From IMG/VR virus record IMGVR_UViG_3300021520_000002, positions 1 through 64,000 of that record: DNA of 64,000 nucleotides. One strand, 5' to 3'. Under the pieces are notes generated by a model, which was not told the DNA's origin, ran no database searches, and saw only the letters and a program-made list of their open reading frames with translations. The translations under genes and the position numbers were made by a program. This document shows positions 1,089-45,542 of the stretch, piece by piece. Position 1 is the first letter of the stretch, and the number at the start of each line of letters is the position of its first letter.

Positions 1089-1126
1089 ATATCGGCAAGA
1101 TCTTGTAATATAGATCTTGCCGATAT
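1089..1126. terminator. Hairpin built from paired TTGCCGAT motifs (15-bp perfect stem)
   Basis: ATATCGGCAAGATCT, 8-nt loop, AGATCTTGCCGATAT; intergenic, just after a stop codon. Confidence 0.7.
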
Positions 1127-1154
1127 TAAAAAGTTATAGTTTTTGGGGAGTGAT

Positions 1155-1544
1155 ATGAAAAGGATAATAACTGATTATAATTTTGTAGCATCAACAAAGA
1201 AAATAACATTTCCATTAGAAACAGGTTTTACTATAGATGGTCTTCTTTTAATTACAAATGTTACAGACAATATTATTATTTATAATTTTGCAGATCCTTT
1301 AACTGGGGCATCTGTAGATATAAGTGGTCTTATTATTACTCTTACATATAATACAACATCAATGAGTGATACTGATCATCTTTTAATTTATCATGATGAT
1401 GGATTACCTGCTGTTAATCAAATAACTGGTGAGAAAGGACGAGAAGCAAGTGAAGTAACTAGTAAAGAACAAATGGATATGTTTACTGATATATTAGAAG
1501 AATTGAGAGAGATTAAACTTATTTTAGCATCTAGTTTTGGATAA
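1155..1544 (+). CDS. Hypothetical virion-associated protein
   Basis: ATG at 1155 after GGGGAG. The LLLITNVTDNIIIYNFAD...LTYNTTSMSDTDHLLIY segment is typical of phage structural proteins. Confidence 0.55.
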   Translation: MKRIITDYNFVASTKKITFPLETGFTIDGLLLITNVTDNIIIYNFADPLTGASVDISGLIITLTYNTTSMSDTDHLLIYHDDGLPAVNQITGEKGREASEVTSKEQMDMFTDILEELREIKLILASSFG

Positions 1545-1562
1545 AAAGGAGGAAATGAGAAT

Positions 1563-2234
1563 ATGTTAGTTAAAATAGCTGGAAGGGTAAGAGGATTATT
1601 TGCCGGTAATTATCCCGACAATAGAGAAGATGAACAATTTCATTTAAATAATAGAGGTGATTGGCTTGTTGCACAAGCTTTACCTGAAAGAACTGAAATA
1701 GTTCGAATGGGAGATACTTGGCAAGTTGCAACAGCAAGTAATGCACCAACAGCTACACTTACTGCGTGGCCAACAACTGTAGCTGGACTTGGTATATGGA
1801 ATGGTGAACCACAAGGTGGTAAATGTTATATTATAGATTCTATAGCGGCAACAGAAATTATTGTTGATCAAACACAATCAAACTGTACTGCTTTATTTGT
1901 ATTAAATAATAAAACTCCAGTAGCCACACCAACACAAATTGGTGCTCAAACTATTAGATCAATGAGTGGAAGAACTTATGGTGGTAGATGTGTTATAGCT
2001 TTAACTGCAAACAATGTAACTGATGATGGTTGGTTTCCTGCTGGTAACTCTGTTGCTCCAGCTCCAGCTGTTGCTGGAAGTGGATGGAAACAAACTGATA
2101 TTCCAATAAATGGACTATATATCGTTCCTCCAGGTGGAATGTTTAGTGTTCAAGGAGTAAAAATTGCAAATCTTGCAGCCCAAATGATATACACAATTCG
2201 TTGGCATGAAGTCCAACTTATTTTAAAATCATAA
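1563..2234 (+). CDS. Tandem paralog 1 of 5 (GRVRGLFxGxYPxNREDE...RWHEVQ family), putative virion protein
   Basis: AAGGAGG RBS; clear similarity to the next four ORFs. Confidence 0.7.
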   Translation: MLVKIAGRVRGLFAGNYPDNREDEQFHLNNRGDWLVAQALPERTEIVRMGDTWQVATASNAPTATLTAWPTTVAGLGIWNGEPQGGKCYIIDSIAATEIIVDQTQSNCTALFVLNNKTPVATPTQIGAQTIRSMSGRTYGGRCVIALTANNVTDDGWFPAGNSVAPAPAVAGSGWKQTDIPINGLYIVPPGGMFSVQGVKIANLAAQMIYTIRWHEVQLILKS

Positions 2235-2251
2235 AGATGAGGTAGGAAACT

Positions 2252-2911
2252 ATGTTAATTAAAATAGCTGGAAGGGTAAGAGGATTTTTTGCCGGTAATT
2301 ATCCTGAAAATAAAGAAGATGAAGAATTTCATTTAAATACTAGAGGTGATATGCTTGTTGCACAAGGATTACCTGAAAGAGCTGAACTTACTAGATTAGG
2401 AGATTCTTGGACAGCTTCAAATACAACAGGGATTGCTGCTTTAACTGGTTGGCCAACAACAACAGCAGGATTTGGTATATGGAATGGTGAACCTTCTAAT
2501 GGTAAATGTTATGTTATAGATTCAGTTTCTTGTACAGATATTGTTGTTGATGCAACACAAGGTGATTGTACTGCTTTATTTGTTATGCTTAATAAACCAC
2601 CTGTTGCTCTACCTGCTGGTGGACAACTTATCCGTGGATTAAGTGGAAGAACTTATGGTGGTAGAGCATTAACAGTTTTAACAGCTGTTGCTAGAGTAGA
2701 TGAAGGTTGGTTTCCAGCAGGATCTTCAGCAACTGTTGGAGCAACTGTTGCTGGTTGTAACTTTAAACAACAATATGCTCCATTAAATGGAATGTATATT
2801 GTGCCTCCAGGTGGAATGTTCAGTGTTGCTGCTGCAAAAGTAGCTGCTGCTGCTGCACAAGTTGTATATACAATTTGTTGGCATGAAGTCCAACTTATTC
2901 TAAAATCATAA
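2252..2911 (+). CDS. Tandem paralog 2 of 5
   Basis: Same N- and C-terminal motifs as paralog 1. Confidence 0.7.
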   Translation: MLIKIAGRVRGFFAGNYPENKEDEEFHLNTRGDMLVAQGLPERAELTRLGDSWTASNTTGIAALTGWPTTTAGFGIWNGEPSNGKCYVIDSVSCTDIVVDATQGDCTALFVMLNKPPVALPAGGQLIRGLSGRTYGGRALTVLTAVARVDEGWFPAGSSATVGATVAGCNFKQQYAPLNGMYIVPPGGMFSVAAAKVAAAAAQVVYTICWHEVQLILKS

Positions 2912-2928
2912 AGATGAGGTAGGAAACT

Positions 2929-3603
2929 ATGTTAATTAAAATAGCTGGAAGAGTAAGAGGATTATTTACCGGTAATTATCCTGAAAATAGAGAAGATGAA
3001 GAGTCACATATAAATAGTAGAGGAGATAATTTATTAATTCAAGGATTACCGGAAAAAACTGAATTAGTTAGACATGGTGATTCATGGCAAGTTAGAAACA
3101 CTACTGCAGTTGCAGCTAGAACAGCACTCCCAACGACTAACCCAGGACTTGGAATTTATAATGGTGAACCAACTGGTGGTAAAAGTTATATTATAGATTC
3201 TGTAGCTTGTACAGAAATTGTTGTTGACGCAACACAATCAGATTGTACTGCTTTAATGGTTTGTATGAATAAACTTCCATTAGCAGTTATACCTTTAGCA
3301 AATTATGATGTTTTAGTTCCAAAATCATTAAGTGGAGGAGGAGCATATCCTGGTAAAGCAATATTTCAATTAATAGCTAGAACTTGTGTTAATGATGGTT
3401 GGTATGCTTGTGGAGATTCTGTACCGGTTGCTACAGCAGTTGCCGGTAGCGGATGGAAACAAACTGATGTCGATGTTAGAGGAATGTATATTGTGCCTCC
3501 AGGTGGCCAATTTAATGTTAATGCTGTTAAAGTAGCTGCAGCTGCCAGTCAATGTTCATATACAATTCGTTGGCATGAAGTTCTTATTTTATATAAAACA
3601 TAA
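2929..3603 (+). CDS. Tandem paralog 3 of 5
   Basis: Same motifs; upstream junction is identical to that of paralog 2. Confidence 0.7.
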   Translation: MLIKIAGRVRGLFTGNYPENREDEESHINSRGDNLLIQGLPEKTELVRHGDSWQVRNTTAVAARTALPTTNPGLGIYNGEPTGGKSYIIDSVACTEIVVDATQSDCTALMVCMNKLPLAVIPLANYDVLVPKSLSGGGAYPGKAIFQLIARTCVNDGWYACGDSVPVATAVAGSGWKQTDVDVRGMYIVPPGGQFNVNAVKVAAAASQCSYTIRWHEVLILYKT

Positions 3604-3618
3604 GTGAGGTATAAAAAC

Positions 3619-4281: not shown

Positions 4282-4294
4282 GTGAGGAAAGAAC

Positions 4295-4957: not shown

Positions 4958-4966
4958 GAGTTTATT

Positions 4967-5167: not shown

Positions 5168-5176
5168 GGAGGTTAA

Positions 5177-5559: not shown

Positions 5560-6645
5560 ATGAGAACTGATTTTTTTAGAAATAGATTATTTATGGGTGA
5601 TATAAAACAGATGCAATCAGAGTTTTTAGTTCCAGAAATTTCTAGTTTAATTGGTTGGTATATTGGTGATGATCTATCGGCAAATTTTGCCGATGAAGAT
5701 GCTATCTTTGCTTGGAAAGATCATTATTCTGGAAATACAGCATATCAAGAAGATGATACTATTACTCAAAGACCTGTTTATAAAGCAAATATAATTAATG
5801 ATCATGGTGTTGCTAGATTTGATAATGCTACATATTCACAAAATTTAATACTTACTAATCCAAAACCATCAACAAAAACTGCTTTTATTGTTGCTAAGAA
5901 AACAGCCACAAGTAATAGTTGTTCAGTTCTTTATCAAACAAATACTAATGTTTTTAATTTCCCAACACCAACCAGTGGAAATGGACAATTATCAATCTCT
6001 GAAGGAACAGTTACTGTTTATACTCATATGGTGGATGCAACTGGATTACACATATTAACAGCAAGAAGAGTATATTCAGATACAGCTTGTGTTGCTAGAG
6101 TAGATGGTGTTGAAGGTTTTCCAGCTAATACAGCAAATTATTGGAATATATCACGTATAGGTTATAATGGTACACGAACTTCATGTTTTGATGGGGATAT
6201 TGCAGAAGTAATATTATTTTCAGATATATTATCTGATGCGAGTGTTATAACTATAGAATGTTATTTATCAAATAAATATGGAATTACTTTTACTGGAGAA
6301 ATGACTGAATCTGTATTAGTATCTGCTGACTGGACATTTGAAAATGCTGCTTGGTCAATAACCGCTGGTGTTTTAAGCTGTACAGGTTCAGGAAATTGTT
6401 ATCCTAATTATGCTGCTCAATCTCCTCCAAAAGTTGGATTAGGTTATGATATTGTTATAACAGTAACAGCTTGTTCTGGAACAATATATTTTTCTTATGC
6501 TGGTAATGCAACAACATTTGAGTTTTCATCAACTGGTACAAAAACATATACAAATATAATAACTTCTGATGCAACAACAATGTATTTAATGAGTATTGGT
6601 GGTACATGTTCTATATCAGCTATAAGTTGTAAAGAACATGTATAA
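5560..6645 (+). CDS. LamG/concanavalin-like domain protein with C-terminal carbohydrate-binding-like domain
   Basis: W-x-D-x-SGN, RPVYKANIIN and FDGDIAEVILF...IECYLSNKYGI signatures; C-terminus is homologous to 34025..34435. Confidence 0.6.
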   Translation: MRTDFFRNRLFMGDIKQMQSEFLVPEISSLIGWYIGDDLSANFADEDAIFAWKDHYSGNTAYQEDDTITQRPVYKANIINDHGVARFDNATYSQNLILTNPKPSTKTAFIVAKKTATSNSCSVLYQTNTNVFNFPTPTSGNGQLSISEGTVTVYTHMVDATGLHILTARRVYSDTACVARVDGVEGFPANTANYWNISRIGYNGTRTSCFDGDIAEVILFSDILSDASVITIECYLSNKYGITFTGEMTESVLVSADWTFENAAWSITAGVLSCTGSGNCYPNYAAQSPPKVGLGYDIVITVTACSGTIYFSYAGNATTFEFSSTGTKTYTNIITSDATTMYLMSIGGTCSISAISCKEHV

Positions 6646-7805: not shown

Positions 7806-10565
7806 ATGTTAACTGAAGACATAAAAAATAAATATCAAATTCAAAGAGAAAAAGCGGCAGCAGATCTTGCCGAAATAAAAAATATAATAACTTTAATAGA
7901 AAAGAAAGACAGTCAAATAAAAGAGAAATGTGATTTTTTACAAACTCTAGTTGATAGTTTACCAACTCCAATTTATGTTAAAGATCTTAATTTAAGATAT
8001 AAAGTTTGTAATGATGCTTTAGCCATTTTAATGGGAGTTAATAGAGAAAGTATTATCGGCAAAACTCTAACAGAGATCTATTCAGATAATGATGAAAGTA
8101 GATTTATGTATGAAAAAGATATGGAACTTCTTGAAAATGGTGGAACACAAACTTTCGATTATGAAATTGCTGGGATAGGTAAACATCCACAAATTTTAAA
8201 TTTTAACAGATCTATATTTAGAGATGAAAATAGACAGATTGCTGGTATTATTGGTTCTTGTTTTGATATAACTGATAGAGTTAAAAAAGAAAAAGAACTT
8301 AGGGTAGAAAGAGAAAAATTTTATAATGCTTTTGATCAGAGTCCTATACCTAAAGTAATAATACAATATGGAACAGGATTAATTTTAGAGATCAACGAAA
8401 CAGCATTAGAAATGTTTGGTTTTACTCGAGAAGAAATTAAAGACAAAACTGTATATGATTTAAGAACGAATAGTGGAAAATCATTAATTAAAGATTATCA
8501 AGATTTTACTCAAGAATTTTTCTTAAGTCAATTAGATGAAAATAATGGTAGAATTAAAAGTATTGATATTATTATATATACTAAAAATGATGAAGAAAAA
8601 GTTATAGCACTTTCAGCTTCAAAGTATCGAGTTAATGGTGGATTTTGTGTTTTATCTATTTTAAAAGATATTACATATCGAGTATTAGCTGAAAATAAGG
8701 TAAAACAAATTCAACGTAATTATGAAATATTTTTTAACACAATTAATGAATTTCTTTTTGTTCTTGATGAAAATGGAAATATCATTCATATGAATTCGAC
8801 AGTTATTGATCGTCTTGGATATACTAAAGAAGAACTTAAATGTATGAATATTATTTCTCTTCATCCAATTGAACGTCAGGATGATACTAAAAAAATTATT
8901 AGAGATATGCTTGATAAAATTATATCAATATGTCCAATTCCAATCATTACAAAACAAGGCATTCAAATACCAGTTGAAACAAAAATTGCACATGGAGTTT
9001 GGAATGATAAACCTGTAATTTTTGGTGTTTCAAAAGATATTTCAGATCTTAAACTATCAGAAGAAAAATTTTCAAAATTATTTTATATTAATCCGACTGT
9101 TTGTGGTTTAAGTGAATTTGATTCTCATCGATATATTGATGTTAATGAAGCTTTTTATACTTTGCTTGGTTTTGAAAAAGACGAAGTTATTGGTAAAACA
9201 GTACATGAATTAAATATTATAACTCATGATCAAATGAATAAAATATTATTAAATGCTGATATTAATGGAAATATAAAGAATATTGAATCTGATATAAGAT
9301 CTAAAAATGGTAATATAAAACATGTTATATTTTCTTCAGAGAGTTTTTTTGTTCAAGATAAAAAATATCGGTTTGTAGTAGTTCAGGATATTACTGAAAG
9401 AAAAAGAATGGAACAAGAAAATATTAAAATAAAAGAAGAATGGGAAGAAACTTTTAATGTTGTTCCTGAGCTTATTGCTATTTTAGATAATGATCATACT
9501 ATAATTAGAGTTAACAAATCTTTTACCGATAGATTTAATAATTCAATGGATTATTTTATCGGCAAGAAATGTTATGAAATTGTTCATAATAATGATAATG
9601 TACCAGAAGAATGTCCACATGCTCAATTATTATTAGATGGAAAACAACATGTTCAGGAAGGATATGATAATCTTCTTAAAGGTTATTTTATAGTAACTTG
9701 TTCTCCAATATTTAATGATAATAAAGAATTGATTGGAAGTGTACATTCAATGATTGATATTACTAAGAGGAAAGAAACAGAAGATAAACTTAAAGAAATT
9801 AGTGAACAATACCAAACTGCTATAGAATTATCAAATGATGCTGTAGCTATTGTTCAAGATGGTAAACATGTTTTTGTTAATAAAAGATTTTTAGAAATTT
9901 TTGGAATTGATTCTTTTGAAGATATTATTGGTAAAGAATATATTAATGTTTATCATAATGATATTGAATTTGTTAGAGATATAAATAGAAGAAGAACTGA
10001 AGGATTAAGAGTACCAAGTAAATATGAATTTAGAGGTTTAAAACTTGGTGATAGAAGAAGTATGTGTATTGAAGTTTCAGCGGCAAAAATTACTTATAAA
10101 GGTAGAGTGGCTACTTTATCATATCTAAGAGATGTTACTGAAAGAAAGAGATATGAGCAATTTCAAAATTTGCCGATATCAACTTTAGATACTATTCCAG
10201 AAATGGTTTGTAGACACGATTCTAATTTTAAATTTACATACGCTAATGAAACATATTGTAAGTTTATTGGTAAGACAAGAGAAAAACTTGAAACTATGAC
10301 TTTATTTGATTTTATGCCATCAGAAGAAGTTGAAAGAGTAAAAGATTATTTAGCTTCTTTTTCAGTTAATAAAACATCTAGTAGTATAGTTAATAAAGTA
10401 ATATTATATAGTGGAGAAATTGTTTACATATATTGGATGAATAGAGCATTTTTCGATTCTGATAATCAATTAATTGAATTACAATCGATAGGTAGAGTTA
10501 GTGATGTATTCGAAATAGAAGATAAGTCAAATAGAAGATTGGATAAGAAAAATTTGGAGAGATAA
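7806..10565 (+). CDS. Multi-PAS/PAC domain protein (about 7 PAS domains), no kinase or GGDEF output domain
   Basis: Six PAC ends (DITDR, DITYR, DISDL, DITER, DITKR, DVTER) plus a seventh PAS (IPEMVCRHD...YANETYC...WMNRAFFD...QSIGR). No H-box or GGDEF follows. Confidence 0.85.
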   Translation: MLTEDIKNKYQIQREKAAADLAEIKNIITLIEKKDSQIKEKCDFLQTLVDSLPTPIYVKDLNLRYKVCNDALAILMGVNRESIIGKTLTEIYSDNDESRFMYEKDMELLENGGTQTFDYEIAGIGKHPQILNFNRSIFRDENRQIAGIIGSCFDITDRVKKEKELRVEREKFYNAFDQSPIPKVIIQYGTGLILEINETALEMFGFTREEIKDKTVYDLRTNSGKSLIKDYQDFTQEFFLSQLDENNGRIKSIDIIIYTKNDEEKVIALSASKYRVNGGFCVLSILKDITYRVLAENKVKQIQRNYEIFFNTINEFLFVLDENGNIIHMNSTVIDRLGYTKEELKCMNIISLHPIERQDDTKKIIRDMLDKIISICPIPIITKQGIQIPVETKIAHGVWNDKPVIFGVSKDISDLKLSEEKFSKLFYINPTVCGLSEFDSHRYIDVNEAFYTLLGFEKDEVIGKTVHELNIITHDQMNKILLNADINGNIKNIESDIRSKNGNIKHVIFSSESFFVQDKKYRFVVVQDITERKRMEQENIKIKEEWEETFNVVPELIAILDNDHTIIRVNKSFTDRFNNSMDYFIGKKCYEIVHNNDNVPEECPHAQLLLDGKQHVQEGYDNLLKGYFIVTCSPIFNDNKELIGSVHSMIDITKRKETEDKLKEISEQYQTAIELSNDAVAIVQDGKHVFVNKRFLEIFGIDSFEDIIGKEYINVYHNDIEFVRDINRRRTEGLRVPSKYEFRGLKLGDRRSMCIEVSAAKITYKGRVATLSYLRDVTERKRYEQFQNLPISTLDTIPEMVCRHDSNFKFTYANETYCKFIGKTREKLETMTLFDFMPSEEVERVKDYLASFSVNKTSSSIVNKVILYSGEIVYIYWMNRAFFDSDNQLIELQSIGRVSDVFEIEDKSNRRLDKKNLER

Positions 10566-12752: not shown

Positions 12753-13337
12753 ATGATAAGAGAAATAAAAATAGATGTAAATAATCATCCATTTAAATTA
12801 GAAGAAGTATTATATGGTAATGAATTTGTACAATTATCGGAAAGAGTTTTATTATGTCATTTAGCGGCAGAATGTACTGGAAATATTTTAGAAATTGGTT
12901 GTAATAAAGGAATAACAACACGTATGCTTGCTTTAAATAATCCATATAAAATTATTTATGGAGTTGATTATGTTGAAGAGAATACAGGTGATCTTCAACA
13001 AGCTGCAGAAAAACCACCAGAAATAGCTATGTATGCTAGGGATCTTAAAAATGTAGTATTACTTGACTTGGATTCAAGGAAACTTAACTATGATTTATTA
13101 TTTCAGAATGTTGAATTAATATTTCTTGATGGAAATCACACATATGATTTTGTTAAAATTGATAGTGAAAAAGCTCTTAGTTATATGAAGAAAAGAGGTA
13201 GTGGAACAATTATATGGCACGATTATTGGAAGCCACAACCATGGATAGGTGTAATGGATTATGTAGATCAATTCATAGCACCAAATTATGAAATGATTAA
13301 AATTGGGGGAATGGTCGCTTGCCGATTTAAATTCTAA
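12753..13337 (+). CDS. Class I SAM-dependent methyltransferase (Methyltransf_24-like)
   Basis: ILEIGCNKG; LIFLDGNHTYD; GTIIWHDY. Confidence 0.8.
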   Translation: MIREIKIDVNNHPFKLEEVLYGNEFVQLSERVLLCHLAAECTGNILEIGCNKGITTRMLALNNPYKIIYGVDYVEENTGDLQQAAEKPPEIAMYARDLKNVVLLDLDSRKLNYDLLFQNVELIFLDGNHTYDFVKIDSEKALSYMKKRGSGTIIWHDYWKPQPWIGVMDYVDQFIAPNYEMIKIGGMVACRFKF

Positions 13338-13347
13338 GGTGGTAATT

Positions 13348-14130
13348 ATGAAGATTATTAGAATAATTTTAATGATAGTTATGGCTGGAGTAATTTTATG
13401 TTTTATTATTGGTGATTTATTTCCACAGGATAAAATTCCACCAAATTCAGTTCAATATCTTCCAGTACTTAAACAATTACTTGAAAGAGATTGGCCGCAA
13501 GGAACTCCTAAATCTTTAATGGCTGGTCAAGTTGAACAAGAGACTTGTATATCTTTAACTCATAAAAAATGTTGGTCACCAACAGCTGAATTAAAGACAA
13601 GTAGAGAATATGGCTTTGGATTAGGTCAAATAACTATTGCGTATGATGCTTCAGGTAAAGAACGTTTTAATAATTTTTTAGATGTTAAAAAAATAGATAA
13701 AAGATTAGAGAAGTGGGAATGGACTGATAGATATAATCCAAATTATCAACTACAAGCTTTAGTTATGAAAGATAGATATAATTATAATCTTATGAAAGGT
13801 TGGGCTGCTGATCACGAGAATAAGATGAATTTTACAATGAATGCTTATAATGGTGGTCTTGGTGGATTAATAAAAGATAGACAATTATGTCAAACTAAAG
13901 CTAATTGTAATCCAAATATTTGGTTTGGTAATGTTGCATTATATTCTTATAAAGCTAAAAATAAAGTTGCTGGCTATGGTAAATCGTTTTTTGAGATTAA
14001 TAGAGAATATGTTGATAATATTAGAAATAAGAGAAGTGCTAAATATACTAGTTATTTAGAACCATTACCGGCAAAAAAAGAAATCTTGCCGGTTAAAAAA
14101 GATTGTTGGATAACTTTAATATTTAAATAA
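13348..14130 (+). CDS. Lytic transglycosylase (SLT-like) endolysin with N-terminal signal/anchor
   Basis: ATG at 13348 after AAGGTGG; hydrophobic N-terminus; QVEQE (catalytic Glu), GFGLGQ, AYNGG, NREYV. Confidence 0.75.
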   Translation: MKIIRIILMIVMAGVILCFIIGDLFPQDKIPPNSVQYLPVLKQLLERDWPQGTPKSLMAGQVEQETCISLTHKKCWSPTAELKTSREYGFGLGQITIAYDASGKERFNNFLDVKKIDKRLEKWEWTDRYNPNYQLQALVMKDRYNYNLMKGWAADHENKMNFTMNAYNGGLGGLIKDRQLCQTKANCNPNIWFGNVALYSYKAKNKVAGYGKSFFEINREYVDNIRNKRSAKYTSYLEPLPAKKEILPVKKDCWITLIFK

Positions 14131-30041: not shown

Positions 30042-31286
30042 ATGAATTTACCACCTTATGGAGATGATAGTAAGAGAAATTTTGCTCATTTTGGTACTCT
30101 TAAAGTAAGCTCACAAGACATACCAAATATGACTATAAAAATATCACCTGGTGGGTTCTGGTATTATACAAGTACTGGACCAATTTATGTTGAATTTGCT
30201 GGTGGTAATTCACCAACAATAACTAAACCGGGTACTAATGCTAAATGGGTAATAATAGCACTAAATTCTAGTGCTCAAATTGTTTTAATTGATGGTTCGA
30301 TTAGTGCACATCCTCAGGTACCAACAATTCCTAGAGGAAGAGTAATTCTTGCCGCTGTTTATGTTCAATCATCAACAACAGAAATTACTAATGATATGAT
30401 TTTTGATACAAGAGCATTGTTTGCTCAGTTTCCAACAGATCATAGAGATTTAGCTGGAACAACTGAAACTGGTTCACATCCAGTTTCATCGATTTCTGGA
30501 TTACAAACTATTTTAGATGATTTAGTTACAGAAGAAGACTTAACTACAGGTTTAGCAACAAAAGCAAATCAAACTGGTACTAATGAGTCTTCTTTTATTT
30601 TAAATGAAGATTTTCTTGGTACTCCTGCTTCTGATGTTAGTTTAATGGTTGAAAGAGGTAGTGAGAGTAATGTTGGTATAAAGTGGAATGAAACTTTAGA
30701 TCAATGGCAAGTAACTTCAGATGGTAGTATATGGAATACATTTGGTTCTGTTTCTACTAGTGGTGTGTCTGGTAGTTCAGGTACATCTGGCACAAGTGGA
30801 AGTGGCACAAGTGGAACTTCAGGTTCTGGAACAAGTGGTTCAAGTGGAACCTCTGGAATAGCTGGTTCTTCAGGAACTTCTGGAGCAGATGGAACTTCAG
30901 GTTCTTCAGGAACATCTGGAATAAATGGTTCTTCAGGCACTTCTGGTGTATCAGGTAGTAGTGGAACTTCTGGAAGTTCAGGTTTATCAGGTTCTGATGG
31001 AACAAGTGGGTCGAGTGGGTCGAATGGAACTTCAGGTTCTTCAGGTACATCAGGAGTAGATGGAACATCAGGTTCTTCAGGAACTTCTGGAGCAGATGGA
31101 ACAGCTGGTAGTTCTGGAACAAGTGGAGCAGATGGAACTTCAGGTTCTTCAGGAACGAGTGGAACATCTGGAACTGGTTGGAGTGGAACATGTTATGTTG
31201 GTAATACTTCAGGCACTTCAGCAGAACTTAATTATTATTTAACAATTAGTAATGGGATAGTTACTAATTTTGTTGGACCAGTGTAA
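30042..31286 (+). CDS. MNxPPYG-domain fibre paralog 1 with GST repeats
   Basis: Shared N-terminal domain; ERG...W...W module; GST repeats. Confidence 0.7.
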   Translation: MNLPPYGDDSKRNFAHFGTLKVSSQDIPNMTIKISPGGFWYYTSTGPIYVEFAGGNSPTITKPGTNAKWVIIALNSSAQIVLIDGSISAHPQVPTIPRGRVILAAVYVQSSTTEITNDMIFDTRALFAQFPTDHRDLAGTTETGSHPVSSISGLQTILDDLVTEEDLTTGLATKANQTGTNESSFILNEDFLGTPASDVSLMVERGSESNVGIKWNETLDQWQVTSDGSIWNTFGSVSTSGVSGSSGTSGTSGSGTSGTSGSGTSGSSGTSGIAGSSGTSGADGTSGSSGTSGINGSSGTSGVSGSSGTSGSSGLSGSDGTSGSSGSNGTSGSSGTSGVDGTSGSSGTSGADGTAGSSGTSGADGTSGSSGTSGTSGTGWSGTCYVGNTSGTSAELNYYLTISNGIVTNFVGPV

Positions 31287-31302
31287 TTTTTTAGAAACTC
31301 AA

Positions 31303-31331
31303 AAAGAGGGAGATGATATTTCTCCCTCTTT
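31303..31331 (+). terminator. Intrinsic terminator-like hairpin
   Basis: AAAGAGGGAGA, 7-nt loop, TCTCCCTCTTT. Confidence 0.7.
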
Positions 31332-31360
31332 AATTAAAATTTAGTTTCGGAGGGCTTTAT

Positions 31361-34021: not shown

Positions 34022-34024
34022 AAT

Positions 34025-34435
34025 ATGATAAGAGGTTCTGCATTTTTGGGAGCAATTAGACCATATATTCCTTCAACAGGTAATCCAGAAATGATGGTAC
34101 TTCCAATGGTTACTAGTGGTTGGTCTTTAAATGCTAATTGGACAATTTCAAGTGGTATTTTGTCATGTGGTGGAGGTGGAGGTTGGGATGATTGTTTTCC
34201 TAATTATACTACAGGTATGGTTCAACCAACAGCTGGAGTAAGTTATGATCTTATTTTTTCTGTTTCAGCCAATAGTGGCACAATATATTTTAATTTTTCA
34301 GCTGCTGGAATACAATCATTTTCAGGAACTGGTGATAAGAGTTTTACTTTAACATCGGTTGATGGAACATCAATATATATAGTAAGTATGGGTGCTTCAT
34401 GTTCTATAACAAAGATAAGTTGTAAAGTACATTAG
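34025..34435 (+). CDS. Small carbohydrate-binding-like protein, homologous to the C-terminus of 5560..6645
   Basis: W.I..G.LSC, C(Y/F)PNY, YD...V.A.SGTIYF, CSI..ISCK.H are shared. Confidence 0.55.
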   Translation: MIRGSAFLGAIRPYIPSTGNPEMMVLPMVTSGWSLNANWTISSGILSCGGGGGWDDCFPNYTTGMVQPTAGVSYDLIFSVSANSGTIYFNFSAAGIQSFSGTGDKSFTLTSVDGTSIYIVSMGASCSITKISCKVH

Positions 34436-34444
34436 AAATGTTTG

Positions 34445-34476
34445 ATCGGCAAGATTTAGAAATAGATCTTGCCGAT
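34445..34476. terminator. Hairpin built from paired TTGCCGAT motifs
   Basis: ATCGGCAAGAT...ATCTTGCCGAT, intergenic. Confidence 0.65.
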
Positions 34477-34508
34477 AATTAATTGGTATTTAATAGGAGG
34501 TAATTTTA

Positions 34509-36839
34509 ATGAATGTACCACCTTATGGAAATAATTATAAAAAAATGGGTGCATATTTTTCAAACTTACAGGTAACATCTAGATCTACACCTGATATGAC
34601 AGTAAAAGTTTTACCAGGTGGTTTTTGGAGACATACGGTCAATGGACCAGTTTATGTTGAATGTGTTGGAGGTTATTCAACAACAATCACAGCACCTGTT
34701 AGTTATTCAAAATGGGTAATGATTACTCTTAATGAAAGTGGACAAATTGTTCTTTTAGATGGGGCATCTGCTAGCAATCCAGATTTACCAACTGTTCCAC
34801 GTGGTAGGATGACTTTAGCTGTTATTCGTATAAATTCAACAACAACTGAAATCAATGATGATATGATTTATGATCTTAGACCTTTGTTTGCACAGTATCC
34901 AACAGATTATCGGGATTTAACTGCTCCTGATGAGTCTACTTATAATCCAACTTCAGGATCGTCAGGAAGTTCTGGAACATCAGGTAGATCAGGAACGAGT
35001 GGATATTCTGGATTAAGTGGCACATCTGGTAGTTCTGGTTCTTCTGGAACATCTGGAAGCTCTGGTACAAGTGGGTCGAGTGGAACATCAGGTTCTTCAG
35101 GAACATCAGGTTCTTCTGGAACAAGTGGTTCAAGTGGTTCTTCAGGAAGTTCAGGTACATCTGGAAGTTCAAGTACATCAGGTTCTTCAGGAACATCAGG
35201 TTCTTCTGGAACAAGCGGAAGTTCTGGTTCAAGTGGTTCTGATGGTACTTCAGGAAGTTCAGGAACATCAGGTTCTTCAAGTACATCAGGAAGTTCTGGA
35301 ACAAGTGGAACATCAGGTTCTTCAGGTTCTTCAGGTTCTGATGGAACAAGTGGTTCTTCTGGAACGAGTGGGTCGAGTGGTACATCTGGAAGTTCTGGAA
35401 CAAGTGGAAGTAGTGGAACTTCAGGTTCTGATGGTACTTCAGGTAGTTCTGGAACAAGTGGAAGTAGTGGAACTTCAGGAACAGATGGAACAAGTGGTTC
35501 TAGTGGAACATCAGGTTCTTCAGGAACAAGTGGTATAGATGGTTCTTCAGGAACAAGTGGAAGTTCAAGCACATCTGGAAGTTCTGGAACAAGTGGAACA
35601 GATGGAACAAGTGGTACAGATGGAACAAGCGGTTCTAGTGGAACATCAGGAAGTTCTGGAACAAGTGGTTCATCAGGCACTTCAGGGTCAAGTGGACTTG
35701 CTGGTGGAACTTCTGGATATTTAGCTGTTTGGTCTGGAGATGATTCGATAGAGAATTCGGGAATATTTAGAAGTGTTGAAAAATATTTTATAGGTACTAG
35801 TGGTATTAATACAAAATTAACTATTGGTTTAACTATTAATCAAGATAATAGTGATGATGAAATAATTTCTTTAAAATCATCTGATGTTTCTCATGCAATG
35901 ACTGGTGTTACTGAAACTGATACATATGGATGTTTTGGTAAAAGTGTTCATGATAAAGGAGGTTTATCAGTTCAAGGTTTTACTGAAAGTATTATTGGAC
36001 TTACTCTTTATGGATATGCAGCTACATCTGCAACAAATGCATCTCAAGCACCAATAGTACTTAATGCTTATGAAACTGGTACTAGAGGATGGTTTAATGC
36101 AACAGATAATCTTATTTTATTTATAAATGGTGGTAGTGCAGCTAGTAGAATTATGGGAGATGGTAGTTATTTTATCAATGAAAGCATCAATACAAAACAA
36201 AATATGGGTATTACAATTAATCAATATACTTATGATACTGAATATATTTCTCTTAAACAAAATTTTACTCATGGAATGTCAAATATTACAGAAACTGATA
36301 CATATGGAATTATGAGAGAAGTTTTGATAGACCATGGTGGATTAGATATTAAAGGTTTATCAGATCAAATTAAAGGTGTTCAAATTAATGGATATGCTGG
36401 CACATCTGGCACATCTACTGCAACAACATCCGAATCTACTATTTATGTTAATGCTTATTTAAAAAATAGTACTACTTCAGGTTCTCATGGAACTGATGCT
36501 AATTTATTTGCTGTTGCAAATAATAGTGATGTTCAATTTATAGTTAAAGGAAATGGTGATATATTTTATAATGGTACATCTGGAACACCATTTGATGATT
36601 ATCAAGATGCTTTAGCGTGTCAAGATCTTTCTTATAACTTAAGTAGTGAATATGGTAAAATACTCATGTATAATAAAGAACAATTTGTTCAAATGGGTGT
36701 TATGACTGAAGATGGATTTGTTAGTAGAAAGAATATGGATATGTTACAGCTTGGTGCTGTAGGTGAATTATATCGAGTGTGTTTGACGTTATGTGATGAA
36801 CTTGGTATATCATTTGATGATGCTAAAAAAATGAATTAA
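34509..36839 (+). CDS. MNxPPYG-domain fibre paralog 3 with GST repeats and a duplicated C-terminal beta domain
   Basis: NTK..G.TINQ...D.E.ISLK...H.M...TETDTYG occurs twice. The C-terminal helical segment (FDDYQDAL...LQLGAVGELY) could be an intramolecular chaperone. Confidence 0.7.
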   Translation: MNVPPYGNNYKKMGAYFSNLQVTSRSTPDMTVKVLPGGFWRHTVNGPVYVECVGGYSTTITAPVSYSKWVMITLNESGQIVLLDGASASNPDLPTVPRGRMTLAVIRINSTTTEINDDMIYDLRPLFAQYPTDYRDLTAPDESTYNPTSGSSGSSGTSGRSGTSGYSGLSGTSGSSGSSGTSGSSGTSGSSGTSGSSGTSGSSGTSGSSGSSGSSGTSGSSSTSGSSGTSGSSGTSGSSGSSGSDGTSGSSGTSGSSSTSGSSGTSGTSGSSGSSGSDGTSGSSGTSGSSGTSGSSGTSGSSGTSGSDGTSGSSGTSGSSGTSGTDGTSGSSGTSGSSGTSGIDGSSGTSGSSSTSGSSGTSGTDGTSGTDGTSGSSGTSGSSGTSGSSGTSGSSGLAGGTSGYLAVWSGDDSIENSGIFRSVEKYFIGTSGINTKLTIGLTINQDNSDDEIISLKSSDVSHAMTGVTETDTYGCFGKSVHDKGGLSVQGFTESIIGLTLYGYAATSATNASQAPIVLNAYETGTRGWFNATDNLILFINGGSAASRIMGDGSYFINESINTKQNMGITINQYTYDTEYISLKQNFTHGMSNITETDTYGIMREVLIDHGGLDIKGLSDQIKGVQINGYAGTSGTSTATTSESTIYVNAYLKNSTTSGSHGTDANLFAVANNSDVQFIVKGNGDIFYNGTSGTPFDDYQDALACQDLSYNLSSEYGKILMYNKEQFVQMGVMTEDGFVSRKNMDMLQLGAVGELYRVCLTLCDELGISFDDAKKMN

Positions 36840-36846
36840 AAAGAAG

Positions 36847-36879
36847 ATCGGCAAGATTTAGAAATTAGATCTTGCCGAT
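36847..36879. terminator. Hairpin built from paired TTGCCGAT motifs
   Basis: ATCGGCAAGAT...ATCTTGCCGAT, intergenic. Confidence 0.65.
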
Positions 36880-36900
36880 AATTTAGTTGGAGGTAATTTA

Positions 36901-38553
36901 ATGAAGGTACCACCTTATGGAGATGATAACAAACGAATAGGTGCCTACTTTTCTAATTTACAAGTTAAGGCTCAAATTATACCAGATATGACCGTGTATA
37001 TCTCTTCTGGTGGATTCTGGTACTATACTAGTACTAGTCCAATTTATGTTGAATATGTTGGTGGTAGTTCACCTGAAATTAGTTGCCCTTTTGCTAATTC
37101 AAAATTTGTAGTAATAACAATTAGTGAAATGGGAGAAATTGTACTTATAGATGGGGATTCAAATGCTACACCAGTATTACCATCAATTCCACGTGGTAGA
37201 ATGATATTGGCAGTTGTTGAAATCAATTCGTCAACAATTAAAATAACAGATGATATGATTTTTGATACAAGAACTTTATTTGCTCAATTTCCAACTGATT
37301 ATAGAGATATATCTTCAGCGTTTTATGGTACTAATGGAACTTCTGGTACTTCTGGTTCATCAGGAAGTTCAGGTACTGGTGGAACTTCTGGTTCTTCAGG
37401 TAGAGCTGGATTTAGTGGTAGTAGTGGAACTAGTGGAACTTCTAGTACAAGTGGAAGTTCTGGAACATCTGGAACATCTGGAACATCTGGAACATCTGGA
37501 AGTAGTGGAACATCTGGATCATCTGGAACAAGTGGATTTGGAATAACTGGTACTGGTGGAACTTCAGGAAGTAGTGGAACATCAGGAACATCAGGTATTT
37601 CTTTTTATGGAGTAACATCTGGATCATCTGGAAGTTCTGGAACAAGTGGTAGTTCTAGTACTAGTGGAACTTCAGGAACTAGTGGAACTTCAGGAACTAG
37701 TGGAACTTCAGGAACATCTGGAACTTCAGGAACATCTGGAAGTAGCGGTTCTTCAGGAACATCAGCAACTAGTGTAACATCAGGTTCATCTGGAATAAGT
37801 GGTACAGCTGGTTCATCGGGAAGTTCTGGTTCAAGTGGATCGAGTGGAACAACAGGAAGTTCAGGTTCTAGTGGAACTTCAGCAACTTCTATAACTTCTG
37901 GAAGTAGTGGAACTTCGGGTAGTTCTGGTTCGAGTGGAAGTAGTGGAACATCTGGAAGTTCTGGAACAGGTGGATCTTCAGGTTCATCTGGAAGTTCAGG
38001 AACAGGTGGTTCATCTGGAAGTTCAGGAACAGGTGGTTCATCTGGAAGTTCAGGAACAGGTGGTTCATCTGGAAGTTCAGGAACAGGTGGTTCATCTGGA
38101 AGTTCTGGTTCTGATGGTAGTTCTGGATCAAGTGGTTCTTCTGGAAGTTCTGGATCTGGTGGGACATCTGGTTCATCTGGAACATCAGGTTCTAGTGGAC
38201 CTGCTGGAACAAGTGGATCGAGTGGAACATCTGCAACTTTAGGAACAAGTGGTGTTTTTGGAGCTTGGTCAACAGCTGGAGAATATGGAGCAGGAACTAG
38301 TTATCAAGCATCTGTTGATGGATTTGTACTTGTTCATCTTGCTGGGGGTGCTGGGGTATCATCTATTGGTTATACAGATTCTGCTGATCCACCAACAGTT
38401 ATAAGAGCAAGTGCTGGATGTGATGTTGTAAATGGAGGAGATTATAGTGTACATGTATATTATAATTCTTTTACCATGCCTGTTAAAAAAGGAGATTATT
38501 GGAAAGTTAGTGCTGCAACTCAATTATATTGGCTACCACTAATGAGTATTTAA
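36901..38553 (+). CDS. MNxPPYG-domain fibre paralog 4 with GST repeats
   Basis: Shared N-terminal domain; C-terminal YQASVDGFV...FTMPVKKGDYWKV domain. Confidence 0.7.
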   Translation: MKVPPYGDDNKRIGAYFSNLQVKAQIIPDMTVYISSGGFWYYTSTSPIYVEYVGGSSPEISCPFANSKFVVITISEMGEIVLIDGDSNATPVLPSIPRGRMILAVVEINSSTIKITDDMIFDTRTLFAQFPTDYRDISSAFYGTNGTSGTSGSSGSSGTGGTSGSSGRAGFSGSSGTSGTSSTSGSSGTSGTSGTSGTSGSSGTSGSSGTSGFGITGTGGTSGSSGTSGTSGISFYGVTSGSSGSSGTSGSSSTSGTSGTSGTSGTSGTSGTSGTSGTSGSSGSSGTSATSVTSGSSGISGTAGSSGSSGSSGSSGTTGSSGSSGTSATSITSGSSGTSGSSGSSGSSGTSGSSGTGGSSGSSGSSGTGGSSGSSGTGGSSGSSGTGGSSGSSGTGGSSGSSGSDGSSGSSGSSGSSGSGGTSGSSGTSGSSGPAGTSGSSGTSATLGTSGVFGAWSTAGEYGAGTSYQASVDGFVLVHLAGGAGVSSIGYTDSADPPTVIRASAGCDVVNGGDYSVHVYYNSFTMPVKKGDYWKVSAATQLYWLPLMSI

Positions 38554-38569: not shown

Positions 38570-38603
38570 ATCAGCAAGATTTATATTTCAAGATCTTGCC
38601 GAT
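38570..38603. terminator. Degenerate hairpin of the TTGCCGAT family
   Basis: ATCAGCAAGAT...ATCTTGCCGAT (one mismatch). Confidence 0.55.
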
Positions 38604-42574: not shown

Positions 42575-42586
42575 GGAGGAAAATTT

Positions 42587-42880: not shown

Positions 42881-42893
42881 TAGAGAGGTCAAT

Positions 42894-43322: not shown

Positions 43323-43347
43323 AAATAATATTTTTGGAGGTTTTTTT

Positions 43348-43911: not shown

Positions 43912-43941
43912 ATAAAAACAAAATTATGGAGGTAATATAAT

Positions 43942-44271: not shown

Positions 44272-44292
44272 CTTTTAAATAGGAGTTGACTT

Positions 44293-44673
44293 ATGAAATT
44301 TAACGTCAACAAGATTATAACCGAAACAGTTTCTGAAAAAATAGTTAATGAATTTGAGATGGCTGATATTGGTGGAGCGGCTGTTAAAGGTTATAAGAAG
44401 GCTGAAGATGTTCTTGGTGGAGCTCTTTATAAAGCTTCTGGTTTAGAAAAGCATGATAAAGATGTTAATGAAATGCAAGATAAAGCAGGATCAATGCTTG
44501 TAAATGCTATAAAGAAAAAGAAATCAGCTTTAGCATCACTTCCACCGGAAGAACCATATACACCACCACCATCACTACCAACACCAGAAACAGATGATTA
44601 TGGACCAGCAGCAGGACTAGCTCTTGTTGGAGGTCTTGGGGCTTATGCTCTATCAAAAAAATCAAAAAAATAA
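44293..44673 (+). CDS. Protein with Gly/Ala hydrophobic segment and Lys tail
   Basis: AAGLALVGGLGAYALSKKSKK. Confidence 0.55.
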   Translation: MKFNVNKIITETVSEKIVNEFEMADIGGAAVKGYKKAEDVLGGALYKASGLEKHDKDVNEMQDKAGSMLVNAIKKKKSALASLPPEEPYTPPPSLPTPETDDYGPAAGLALVGGLGAYALSKKSKK

Positions 44674-44696
44674 AACAACAATCGGAGGATAATAAT

Positions 44697-45005
44697 ATGT
44701 TAGACAGAATTAATACCCTTATGGAAAGTGAAGATACACAGAAACTTTTGACTGAAAATGAGCAGTTACTTACTGAAGCAGTAGGTGATACTGTACAGTT
44801 TTCAAACACGTTGAAAGCATTCGTCATCAAACATCCTGAAGAATTTCTTGGTGAGAATACCGAAGAGACTTATAAGAATGTTAGATTATTTACTGAAGTA
44901 GCTACTTCACAGTTTCTTACTGAAGTGACTCATGTTTACGGTTCACAGATTCCAGAACCGATTCAGGAAACTCAGCAGCAGGAAGGTCTTGATCAATATC
45001 TGTAA
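44697..45005 (+). CDS. Acidic hypothetical protein, possible prohead core component
   Basis: GGAGG RBS; multiple L-x-E sites (LME, LTE). Confidence 0.45.
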   Translation: MLDRINTLMESEDTQKLLTENEQLLTEAVGDTVQFSNTLKAFVIKHPEEFLGENTEETYKNVRLFTEVATSQFLTEVTHVYGSQIPEPIQETQQQEGLDQYL

Positions 45006-45017
45006 AAAGAGGTTGTT

Positions 45018-45266
45018 ATGACAAACGATTCGATCAACGAAGCTATTGATCCAGTAACTGCAGTAATAGCTGCTGGTATAGCGGCTTATGCTGGTCATAA
45101 ACTTTATAAAAACTATAAACAAAAAAAGACTCTTGAAAAATTTGGTGTTAAAGAAGAACCAAAAAAAGATAGTACTTCAGATGATGAAGATTCTGCAAGA
45201 GATATAGCATACTATAATGCCGTTGATTTACCATCAAGTATAACTTATAATACACCAAAGAGGTAA
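45018..45266 (+). CDS. Small protein with Gly/Ala hydrophobic segment
   Basis: AVIAAGIAAYAGHKLYKNYKQKK. Confidence 0.5.
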   Translation: MTNDSINEAIDPVTAVIAAGIAAYAGHKLYKNYKQKKTLEKFGVKEEPKKDSTSDDEDSARDIAYYNAVDLPSSITYNTPKR

Positions 45267-45271
45267 ATATT

Positions 45272-45493
45272 ATGGTATCAGTGGTTGAATATTTGAATGA
45301 AGGTAGAATTTGGAATTCATTAAAATCTAGTTTTGCTAATCTTTTTGGTGGACCGGCAAAAATTAAGAAATCAGATTTATCTTCAAATGATAAAATTGAT
45401 AACTCAGAAGCATCATATCGTCGTTTAACACCAAAACCATTAGCATCAACTAGAAATAAGCTTGGTTATAAACCTAAGAAAACTACAGTTTAA
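45272..45493 (+). CDS. MIS-leader family small protein
   Basis: Starts MVSVVEYLNE. Confidence 0.55.
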   Translation: MVSVVEYLNEGRIWNSLKSSFANLFGGPAKIKKSDLSSNDKIDNSEASYRRLTPKPLASTRNKLGYKPKKTTV

Positions 45494-45505
45494 CATAAAA
45501 AAGAA

Positions 45506-45542
45506 TTATCGGCAAGACCTTTAAAATAGGTCTTGCCGATAA
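45506..45542. terminator. Bidirectional terminator-like hairpin of the TTGCCGAT family between convergent genes
   Basis: TTATCGGCAAGACCT, 7-nt loop, AGGTCTTGCCGATAA; perfect 15-bp stem. Confidence 0.75.

What the first reader, a model, noticed from the sequence alone, without database searches (positions are those of the whole stretch)
1089..45542. The same motif is used in inverted pairs to build intergenic hairpins, with a compensatory change
SEEN: hairpins at 1089-1126, 34445-34476, 36847-36879, 38570-38603 and 45506-45542 all use ATCGGCAAGA / TCTTGCCGAT arms. The 45506 copy, between convergent genes, has GACCT/AGGTC in place of GATCT/AGATC, so pairing is preserved. Inverted pairs also occur inside CDSs (5676-5694, 14067-14093). 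Most lack a clear U-tract. KNOWN: Neisseria and Pasteurellaceae uptake sequences are likewise used in inverted pairs as terminators. INFERENCE: either terminators or RNA-processing sites, or dimeric high-affinity operators for the protein that recognises the single motif.
Basis: partly seen in the sequence, partly recalled or inferred. Interest (0 to 1): 0.6.

Follow-up and report, generated by a model that had tools for sequence, protein, structure and literature searches.

The report
Conserved post-gene RNA hairpins in jumbo phage
An uncultured freshwater jumbo phage ends about 30 of its genes with nearly the same RNA stem-loop, built from two inverted copies of a short DNA word that is also scattered through its genes. 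This resembles the way some bacteria turn their DNA-uptake words into terminators.

Summary
The window is the first 64 kb of a 285.6-kb virus record, a jumbo phage that encodes its own multisubunit RNA polymerases. All five hairpins are real. The genome holds 28 strong copies, and relatives down to about 50% protein identity hold about 9-30 each.

The 8-bp core CGGCAAGA/TCTTGCCG never changes. The pairs outside and inside it change on both sides together. The distance between the two cores varies from 12 to 45 nt, which excludes a rigid double-stranded operator.

The hairpins start a median 8 nt after a stop codon. G·U wobbles favour the sense strand 25:2, and GNRA loops favour it 15:3, so the structure acts in RNA.

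Ten of 28 copies carry a U-run of 5 or more (13 of 28 with 4 or more). Four sit in the slot upstream of a phage promoter motif that unique GC-rich terminators fill elsewhere. The rest abut the next ribosome-binding site and are probably read through.

The single word is itself enriched 10-20-fold in coding DNA against synonymous-codon shuffles, on both strands.

Best reading: 3'-end terminator, attenuator or stabiliser hairpins that double as carriers of a phage-specific DNA word, and occasionally as recombination junctions. No transcript ends could be mapped.

The parts
1089..1126 (+). Family hairpin with perfect 15-bp stem and 8-nt loop. It begins 10 nt after the stop of ORF 742-1080 and ends 18 nt before ORF 1143-1544.
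   Evidence: 55-56 bits; -23.5 kcal/mol, z -7.5
34445..34476 (+). Family hairpin with 14-bp stem, one U·G pair on the sense strand and a GAAA tetraloop. It begins 9 nt after the stop of ORF 34025-34435, upstream of a collagen-like tail-fibre gene.
   Evidence: (-20.6 sense vs -15.3 antisense)
36847..36879 (+). Family hairpin between two collagen-like tail-fibre genes, 7 nt after the stop. It has a U·G pair on the sense strand.
   Evidence: (-19.8 vs -15.4)
38570..38603 (+). Family hairpin whose 5' arm carries ATCAGC, giving one mismatch. It begins 16 nt after the stop of tail-fibre gene 36901-38553.
   Evidence: 48 bits; -12.5
45506..45542 (-). Family hairpin with the compensated GACCT/AGGTC pair, between convergent genes. 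On the - strand a U6 run starts 4 nt after the stem, and the hairpin closes a two-gene unit that starts at the promoter-like motif at 48183.
   Evidence: (-25.1/-24.7)
48172..48183 (-). Promoter-like motif TATAGAAATAAT, about 50 copies genome-wide. It lies upstream of minus-strand genes 48130-46889 and 46885-45545, which end at hairpin 45506-45542.
5676..5694 (.). Short palindrome of two back-to-back single words inside CDS 5560-6645. It is not a full family member.
   Evidence: 22.2 bits; -11.4
14067..14093 (.). Weak inverted pair (ACCGGCAA ... TTGCCGGT) near the 3' end of CDS 13303-14130.
   Evidence: 16.6 bits; -11.5
9558..9567 (+). Example of the dispersed single word inside a CDS. Other exact 10-mers in the window lie at 54598-54607 (-) and 60638-60647 (+).
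31303..31331 (.). Unique GC-rich hairpin with flanking A/T runs in the same post-stop slot. It is an ordinary terminator-type hairpin, included for comparison.
51011..51038 (+). Unique GC-rich hairpin directly upstream of a promoter-like motif at 51059-51070. This is the slot that family hairpins fill elsewhere.

Best explanation
The hairpins are a lineage-specific family of RNA stem-loops formed in the sense transcript just after stop codons. The stem has 13-15 bp and the loop is often GNRA.

Where a U-run follows, they most likely end transcription. Ten of 28 copies have a run of 5 or more, and 13 of 28 a run of 4 or more. This fits the conserved-sequence terminators mapped in the jumbo phages phiKZ and 201phi2-1.

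Where the next ribosome-binding site follows directly, they are probably read through. This is mostly the case in the late structural operons. There they would act as attenuators or as barriers that protect the 3' end of the upstream message (major head, tail sheath, tail fibres, RNA polymerase subunits).

Their arms are two inverted copies of a phage-specific word, A[T/C]CGGCAAGA, that is itself selected throughout the genome at the DNA level. Terminator hairpins therefore serve as cheap carriers of two copies, the same logic as paired uptake sequences in Neisseria and Pasteurellaceae. Being repeated, they also act as recombination junctions.

Shown here: the structure, covariation, strand asymmetry, position and word enrichment. 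Inferred: termination, stabilisation and any protein that reads the word.
For: There are 28 strong copies in the genome and about 9-30 in each relative.

Across the clade 71 copies have a clear upstream ORF. Of these, 54 start within 12 nt of the stop codon and 64 within 20 nt (median 8).

Changes on both sides occur in 8 of 14 pairs, in 52 cells, and none of 500 shuffles reaches this. Slid controls fall to 19-55% paired against 94%. For example, pair 2 reads UA 79, CG 16, GC 4.

The sense strand is the more stable one in 25 copies and the antisense in 2. GNRA tetraloops appear 15 times on the sense strand and 3 on the antisense.

T-runs of 4 or more occur in 13 of 28 copies against 11% of background, and runs of 5 or more in 10 of 28 against 5%.

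Four family hairpins sit directly upstream of the T-rich element and promoter motif. At least 15 unique GC-rich hairpins occupy that same slot elsewhere.

In the window, a minus-strand unit runs from the promoter motif at 48183 to hairpin 45506 plus U6.

The hairpins follow the major head, tail sheath, tail fibre and RNA polymerase beta genes.

Relatives at 41-53% capsid identity keep a hairpin after the capsid gene, but with unrelated GC-rich sequences. The slot is therefore older than the family.

The phage encodes two sets of RNA polymerase beta-like genes. phiKZ and 201phi2-1 have mapped terminators with conserved stem-loop motifs (PMC10914365, PMC11512511).

Word enrichment: ATCGGCAA occurs 100 times outside hairpins against 13 expected. 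In CDSs it occurs 47 times sense and 52 antisense, against 2.2 and 4.9 in synonymous shuffles. The relative G001 shows CGGCAAGA 58 times against 5.8 expected.
Against: No transcript 3' ends were available. The only RNA data are assembled contigs.

One 1742-nt contig from an RNA library spans hairpin 106262 with both flanks. That copy is therefore read through, unless the library carries DNA.

About half the copies have no U-run, and in many others the run starts 4-6 nt after the stem. This is poor for classical intrinsic termination.

A pure terminator needs no invariant 8-bp core across genomes that share only about 50% protein identity.

The G·U asymmetry could be partly inflated by shared ancestry of copies or by strand-biased mutation. 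However, both C>T and A>G variants contribute to it.

Three copies lie in reversed loop orientation (72997, 91275, 271260).
Confidence: 0.6

Rival explanations
1. The hairpin is a binding or cleavage site for a sequence-specific phage protein acting on RNA, such as an endoribonuclease or a translational or stability regulator. The invariant core would be the recognition element. 3' ends would arise by processing, not by termination.
For: The 8-bp core is invariant while the flanking pairs covary. Many copies lack U-runs and abut the next SD. An RNA-library contig reads through one copy. The giant-virus 'hairpin rule' shows such processing exists (PMC4402537).
Against: No RNase III domain was found in the genome and no candidate protein was identified. 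The same word is enriched equally on the antisense strand of genes, which an RNA-only reader does not explain. The family shares a slot with ordinary terminators.
Confidence: 0.17
2. The hairpin is a selfish or passively spreading palindromic repeat, like REP or MITE elements. It would persist by recombination or gene conversion, be tolerated in intergenic DNA, and have no dedicated function.
For: The copies are highly similar. A split copy at 98772/99079-99090 holds a small-ORF cassette between its arms and is intact in a relative. The UTR and N-terminus are duplicated after several copies. Assembly contigs break at the copies.
Against: Orthologous junctions keep the hairpin at about 50-60% flanking protein identity. 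Orientation and G·U asymmetry relative to transcription are strong. The distance to the stop codon is tight. No Y1/RAYT transposase was found. Compensated changes imply selection on pairing.
Confidence: 0.1
3. The hairpin is a double-stranded DNA operator. A dimeric DNA-binding protein that reads the single word would bind the inverted pairs with high affinity and regulate the flanking genes.
For: The single word is enriched genome-wide on both strands, which suggests a DNA-level reader. The sites are palindromic.
Against: The distance between the cores varies from 12 to 45 nt, and the loop from 4 to 8 nt and longer. Arms change on both sides together, which would weaken both half-sites. G·U asymmetry and GNRA loops have no meaning in duplex DNA. 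The sites lie after stop codons rather than at promoters.
Confidence: 0.05
4. The hairpin is a DNA-level hairpin or cruciform signal. Examples would be a hairpin promoter for a virion RNA polymerase as in phage N4, or a replication or priming site.
For: The phage carries its own polymerases. One copy (235448) lies just downstream of a promoter motif. The word density of about one per 1.4-2.8 kb is on the scale of Okazaki fragments.
Against: Most copies sit 5-40 nt before the next start codon with no consistent downstream start signal. The wobble pairs favour the coding strand, not the template strand. A separate, well-conserved promoter motif already exists.
Confidence: 0.05

Closest known systems
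Conserved-sequence terminator stem-loops of jumbo phages phiKZ and 201phi2-1 (PMC10914365, PMC11512511)
   Same: The phage has its own multisubunit RNA polymerases. One stem-loop sequence recurs tens of times at gene or transcription-unit ends and is followed by an A/T-rich or U-rich tail. Some copies lie in 5' UTRs, and bidirectional copies occur between convergent genes.
   Different: The sequences are unrelated: an AT-rich 13-15-bp stem with core CGGCAAGA here, against a G/C-rich 7-8-bp stem there. No 3' ends were mapped here. About half the copies lack a U-run. The arm word is also dispersed inside genes, which is not reported for phiKZ.
DNA uptake sequences (Neisseria DUS, Pasteurellaceae USS) used as inverted pairs in terminators (own knowledge)
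   Same: A short word is over-represented throughout coding DNA on both strands, and inverted pairs sit just downstream of genes and form terminator-like hairpins.
   Different: This is a virus, not a competent bacterium.
PeSLs, composite promoter/stem-loop cassettes of T4-type phages (PMC2839356, PMC4122927)
   Same: Repeated intergenic stem-loops act as terminators or attenuators and are often fused to an early promoter. Recombination between copies shuffles small gene cassettes. Here 4-5 copies are fused to the promoter motif, and one split copy holds a cassette.
   Different: PeSLs are defined by sigma-70-type promoters and have variable poly-G/poly-C stems. Here the stem is the conserved part, most copies have no promoter, and the promoter motif is phage-specific.
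REP/BIME extragenic palindromes of enterobacteria (own knowledge)
   Same: Conserved imperfect palindromes lie after stop codons inside operons, and are known to protect upstream mRNA from 3' exonucleases.
   Different: No RAYT/Y1 transposase gene was found, there is no GTAG head, and the copy number is far lower.
Mimivirus 'hairpin rule' 3'-end processing (PMC4402537)
   Same: A large virus with its own transcription machinery has long A/T-rich hairpins right after genes that define mRNA 3' ends.
   Different: Mimivirus hairpins are conserved in structure only and are cut by a viral RNase III. Here the sequence is conserved and no RNase III domain was found.

Membership tests
Intrinsic (factor-independent) terminator | Stable stem-loop in the nascent sense RNA | tested here: met
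   Copies fold at -12.5 to -25 kcal/mol, z -4.9 to -10.7. The sense strand is favoured 25:2.
Intrinsic (factor-independent) terminator | U-run directly after the stem | tested here: inconclusive
   T-runs of 4 or more within 12 nt occur in 13 of 28 copies (background 11%), and runs of 5 or more in 10 of 28. Many runs start 4-6 nt after the stem, and about half the copies have none. In the window region 30-49 kb the simple scanner accepts only 45506 and 36847.
Intrinsic (factor-independent) terminator | Transcript 3' ends at the site | not testable with these tools
   Only assembled contigs of one small RNA library were available.
phiKZ-type conserved terminator motif | Host-independent phage RNA polymerases | tested here: met
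   There are two RNA_pol_Rpb2_6 matches, and PHROG RNA polymerase beta hits for genes at 222157-224127 and 237060-239048.
phiKZ-type conserved terminator motif | Sequence match to the published motif (G/C-rich stem followed by TTAT) | tested here: not met
   The published consensus is unrelated to ATCGGCAAGATCT/AGATCTTGCCGAT.
Uptake-sequence-like dispersed word with paired terminators | Word over-represented in coding DNA on both strands beyond codon and protein constraints | tested here: met
   100 occurrences against 13 expected (order-3 Markov). 47 and 52 against 2.2 and 4.9 in 200 synonymous shuffles. Sense to antisense is 49:49. The relative G001 shows 58 against 5.8.
Uptake-sequence-like dispersed word with paired terminators | A dedicated receptor or reader of the word | not testable with these tools
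   No candidate was identified. UvrD-helicase and PDDEXK nuclease domains were not found.
PeSL (promoter-early stem-loop cassette) | Stem-loop fused to an early promoter | tested here: inconclusive
   Four of 28 copies are followed by the promoter motif (120530, 127714, 259705, 263666) and one is preceded by it (235448). Most copies have none.
PeSL (promoter-early stem-loop cassette) | Copies serve as recombination points for cassette indels | tested here: inconclusive
   There is one clear case, the split hairpin 98772/99079-99090 with a 91-aa ORF cassette, intact in relative L005.
REP/RAYT system | Cognate Y1 (RAYT) transposase gene | tested here: not met
   PF01797 was not found in the 285.6-kb record.
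Dimeric double-stranded DNA operator | Fixed spacing of the two half-sites | tested here: not met
   Core-to-core distances range from 12 to 45 nt across copies and genomes.
Any curated RNA family (Rfam 15) | Match at gathering score | tested here: not met
   No match was found in the 64-kb window.

The most novel reading that the evidence does not exclude
The word A[T/C]CGGCAAGA is a virus-encoded genome tag, a self-recognition, Chi-like, priming or other DNA-level signal. A protein conserved only in this jumbo-phage subclade would read it. It would be maintained at about 150-200 sites by selection at synonymous positions. Terminator hairpins would have been homogenised into a single family because each one carries two copies at no coding cost. 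That would be an uptake-sequence-like system in a virus.
Probability: 0.25. Interest if true: 0.85.

Novelty: new variant of a known kind. Interest (0 to 1): 0.6.

Why it matters
Jumbo phages with their own RNA polymerases are transcribed independently of the host, and how their transcripts end is poorly understood. A second, unrelated conserved-sequence 3' hairpin family suggests that sequence-specific end signals may be a general trait of such phages. This one comes from an uncultured freshwater clade and has clear covariation and strand asymmetry.

The hairpin arm is also a dispersed word selected at synonymous sites on both strands. I know of no earlier report of this for a virus. It points to an unknown DNA-reading function that could be found by comparative genomics and binding assays. 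The elements are also ready-made parts (terminators, insulators) and markers for this phage clade in metagenomes.

Tried and rejected
- **Phage records, DNA:** a megablast of 5 kb against phage records found no match.
- **Phage records, protein:** a tblastn of the large terminase found at most 25% identity to any isolated phage, so no characterised close relative exists.
- **Rfam:** the window gave no match.
- **Domains sought in the genome:** RNase III, PDDEXK nuclease, UvrD helicase and Y1/RAYT transposase were not found.
- **Sequencing runs:** only DNA holders and one small RNA library of assembled contigs were available. These cannot show transcript ends. Contigs carrying the 72997 and 106262 hairpins with their flanks were seen, which shows presence only.
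- **Capsid-based locus search:** The search for related loci with the capsid protein or a two-sequence alignment returned only close relatives.
- **More distant relatives:** these were reached through the search for homologous proteins and the look-up of encoding contigs.
- **Host origin of the word:** the rest of the metagenome bin that holds relative G001 has only 12 scattered 10-mers in about 3.2 Mb, against 52 on the phage contig.
- **Polarity of the single word along the genome (Chi/KOPS-like):** there is only a mild constant bias, 121:85, with no switch.
- **Conservation of single words at orthologous CDS positions in the 78%-identical relative:** 2 of 6 are conserved, too few to judge.
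- **Not used:** Complex prediction, structure prediction and the large representative protein search. No claim here depends on them.
- **Genetic code:** none other than table 11 was used.


Full report
**What the window is.** The 64-kb window is the start of a single 285,572-bp IMG/VR virus record with 29.4% G+C, estimated 95% complete. ORFs are dense. Genes lie on the + strand from 1-107 kb, mostly on the - strand from 107-264 kb, and on the + strand again from 264-280 kb. PHROG and Pfam hits include collagen-like tail fibres, virion proteins, a UvsX-like recombinase, tail tube and sheath, a gp23-like major head protein, the large terminase, and two sets of multisubunit RNA polymerase beta-like genes. 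It is therefore a jumbo phage of the kind that brings its own RNA polymerases. The DNA occurs in lake and freshwater metagenomes. The terminase is at most 25% identical to any isolated phage.

**The observation.**
- The 10-mer ATCGGCAAGA occurs 12 times in the window against none expected.
- The hairpins fold at -12.5 to -25.1 kcal/mol, far below shuffles.
- The 45506 copy carries a C on one arm and a G on the other at the same pair.
- The two intragenic 'pairs' are short palindromes of the bare word and score poorly against a model of the family (22 and 17 bits against 45-61).
- Genome-wide there are 28 strong copies and 2-3 decayed ones.

**Anatomy.** The consensus is ATCGGCAAGATCT, a loop, then AGATCTTGCCGAT, often with one or two further A-U pairs outside.
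- *Position.* 71 copies from this genome and its relatives have a clear upstream ORF. In these the first arm starts a median 8 nt after the stop codon. 54 start within 12 nt and 64 within 20 nt. The next start codon follows 10-40 nt later.
- *Flanking genes.* The copies follow the major head gene (97373), the tail sheath (106262), each collagen-like tail-fibre gene (34445, 36847, 38570) and two RNA polymerase beta genes (222121, 237021). They precede the tail tube and terminase genes.

**It acts as a paired structure, not as two fixed half-sites.** Related phage contigs were found with the hairpin pattern. The relatives are:
- G003, at 78% nucleotide identity.
- G001, a 256.7-kb contig binned into a Lentimicrobiaceae genome, with median 49% protein identity over 144 shared genes.
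- Fragments in several other bins.

They carry about 9-30 copies each. The 8-bp core CGGCAAGA/TCTTGCCG is essentially invariant. The outer pairs change together (pair 2: UA 79, CG 16, GC 4) and so do the inner pairs (UCU/AGA to GCU/AGC or CCU/AGG). One copy even carries a compensated change inside the core. On the model-based alignment, 8 of 14 pairs show changes on both sides in 52 cells. No shuffle out of 500 reaches this, and slid registers collapse to 19-55% paired against 94%. That alignment is fitted to the model and holds both strands. The distance between the two cores ranges from 12 to 45 nt, because some relatives have longer distal stems. This excludes a rigid dimeric operator on duplex DNA.

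**It acts in the sense RNA.** Some copies differ in stability between the two strands by more than 1 kcal/mol. Among these the gene-sense strand is the more stable in 25 and the antisense in 2 (G000 11:1, G001 7:0, others 7:1; 44 ties). The cause is G·U pairs on the sense strand, which would be A·C mismatches on the other. Both C>T and A>G variants contribute, so a single strand-biased mutation type does not explain it. In this genome the sense-strand loop is a GNRA tetraloop (GAAA or GCAA) in 15 of 28 copies, against 3 of 28 on the antisense. Shared ancestry of copies weakens the statistics but not the direction.

**Relation to termination.**
- T-runs of 4 or more within 12 nt downstream occur in 13 of 28 copies against 11% of background, and runs of 5 or more in 10 of 28 against 5%.
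- They are common in the minus-strand early/middle region (9 of 15) and rare in the late structural region (1 of 11).
- A strongly conserved promoter-like motif, TATAGAAATAAT, has a T-rich element upstream. It occurs about 50 times in intergenic DNA.
- The 20-70 nt upstream of that motif usually holds a strong hairpin. This is a unique GC-rich one in at least 15 cases and the family hairpin in four (120530, 127714, 259705, 263666). The family hairpin is therefore interchangeable with ordinary terminator hairpins in that slot.
- In the window, the minus-strand unit from the motif at 48183 through two genes ends at hairpin 45506 plus U6.
- Relatives at 53%, 45% and 41% capsid identity also have a hairpin right after the capsid gene, but with unrelated GC-rich sequences and no family core. 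The function of the slot is thus older than the family.
- About ten copies abut the next Shine-Dalgarno sequence with no U-run.
- A 1742-nt contig from an RNA library of a source sample spans hairpin 106262 with both flanks. That copy is read through, or the library contains DNA. No reads were available to show transcript ends.

**The single word.** Outside the hairpins, ATCGGCAA occurs 100 times against 13 expected under an order-3 Markov model. This is the strongest signal after the collagen repeats. The occurrences split 49 sense to 49 antisense and lie in several reading frames. In coding DNA the counts are 47 and 52, against 2.2 and 4.9 in 200 shuffles of synonymous codons within genes. 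G001 shows the same (CGGCAAGA 58 against 5.8). The more distant, hairpin-free relatives do not. Neither does the rest of the bin that holds G001. So a phage-specific, DNA-level (strand-symmetric) pressure maintains the word, and it co-occurs with the hairpin family. What reads the word is unknown. No RecB/AddAB-type, RNase III or RAYT genes were detected.

**Recombination.** At 98772 and 99079-99090 the two arms of one hairpin are separated by about 300 bp. This segment carries a 91-aa ORF whose leader is identical to the one after hairpin 97373. In the relative G003 this hairpin is intact and the ORF's homologue sits after the other hairpin. Several copies are followed by duplicated leaders and N-termini. 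Like PeSLs in T4-type phages (PMC2839356, PMC4122927), the repeats can therefore serve as exchange points. Only one clear case was found.

**Comparison with known systems.** The nearest functional precedent is the conserved terminator stem-loop of phiKZ (61 sites) and 201phi2-1 (motif A, 59 sites), mapped by long-read RNA sequencing. The present family has an unrelated sequence, a longer A/U-rich stem, frequent absence of a U-run, and a dispersed copy of its arm in genes. It is not in Rfam.

**Verdict.** This is a real, non-random, lineage-specific family of 3'-end RNA hairpins. Most likely they are terminators or attenuators and 3' stabilisers, and they also carry a genome-wide phage word. 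Termination itself is inferred, not shown. Confidence in the RNA 3'-end role is about 0.6. It is a new variant of a known kind, and the open question with real interest is what selects the word.

Noticed in passing
window 48172-48183 (-), 51059-51070 (+), 59921-59932 (+); about 50 sites genome-wide, mostly - strand 108-264 kb: A strongly conserved promoter-like motif, (TTTCA)TATAGAAATAAT, has a T-rich element 15-25 nt upstream. It usually sits just after a terminator-type hairpin. It is also present in relative G001, and a variant occurs in a relative with 41% capsid identity (L157). It is probably the early or middle promoter of a phage polymerase.
   Followed up: partly
whole genome; window examples 9558-9567, 54598-54607, 60638-60647: The single word A[T/C]CGGCAA(GA) is enriched 8-20-fold outside hairpins, on both strands and in several frames. 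It is built through synonymous codon choice. There is a mild constant bias along the genome (TTGCCG 121 against CGGCAA 85 on the + strand). Its function is unknown.
   Followed up: partly
G000 98772-99090 (locus L141:18772-19090); relatives L004, L005: One hairpin is split by a cassette of about 300 bp. The cassette carries a 91-aa ORF with the same leader as the gene after hairpin 97373. The hairpin is intact in the 78%-identical relative, where the ORF homologue sits after the other hairpin.
   Followed up: yes
window 30042-38553: This is a run of collagen-like tail-fibre genes with shared leaders and N-termini (MNVPPYG...). Three of the four downstream gene junctions (34445, 36847, 38570) carry a family hairpin; the junction at 31303 carries a unique hairpin and 34021/34025 none. 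Their repeats give the most over-represented 8-mers of the genome.
   Followed up: partly
L152:2501-4365 (IMGVR_UViG_3300022664_000125): The major-head-protein homologue of this relative spans about 530 nt more than expected and does not translate in one frame. An intron, intein or homing insertion is possible.
   Followed up: no
Genome-contig loci L014-L111 (several MAG bins): Contigs of this phage clade are binned into genomes labelled Lentimicrobiaceae, Bacteroidetes, Nitrospiraceae, Geobacteraceae and Patescibacteria. These look like binning artefacts, so they give no reliable host. Strong GGAGG ribosome-binding sites are used throughout.
   Followed up: partly
G000 235448-235505 (locus L148:15448-15505): One family hairpin lies 13 nt downstream of a promoter motif, at the very 5' end of the predicted transcript. 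It could be a 5' stabiliser or a premature-termination element.
   Followed up: no
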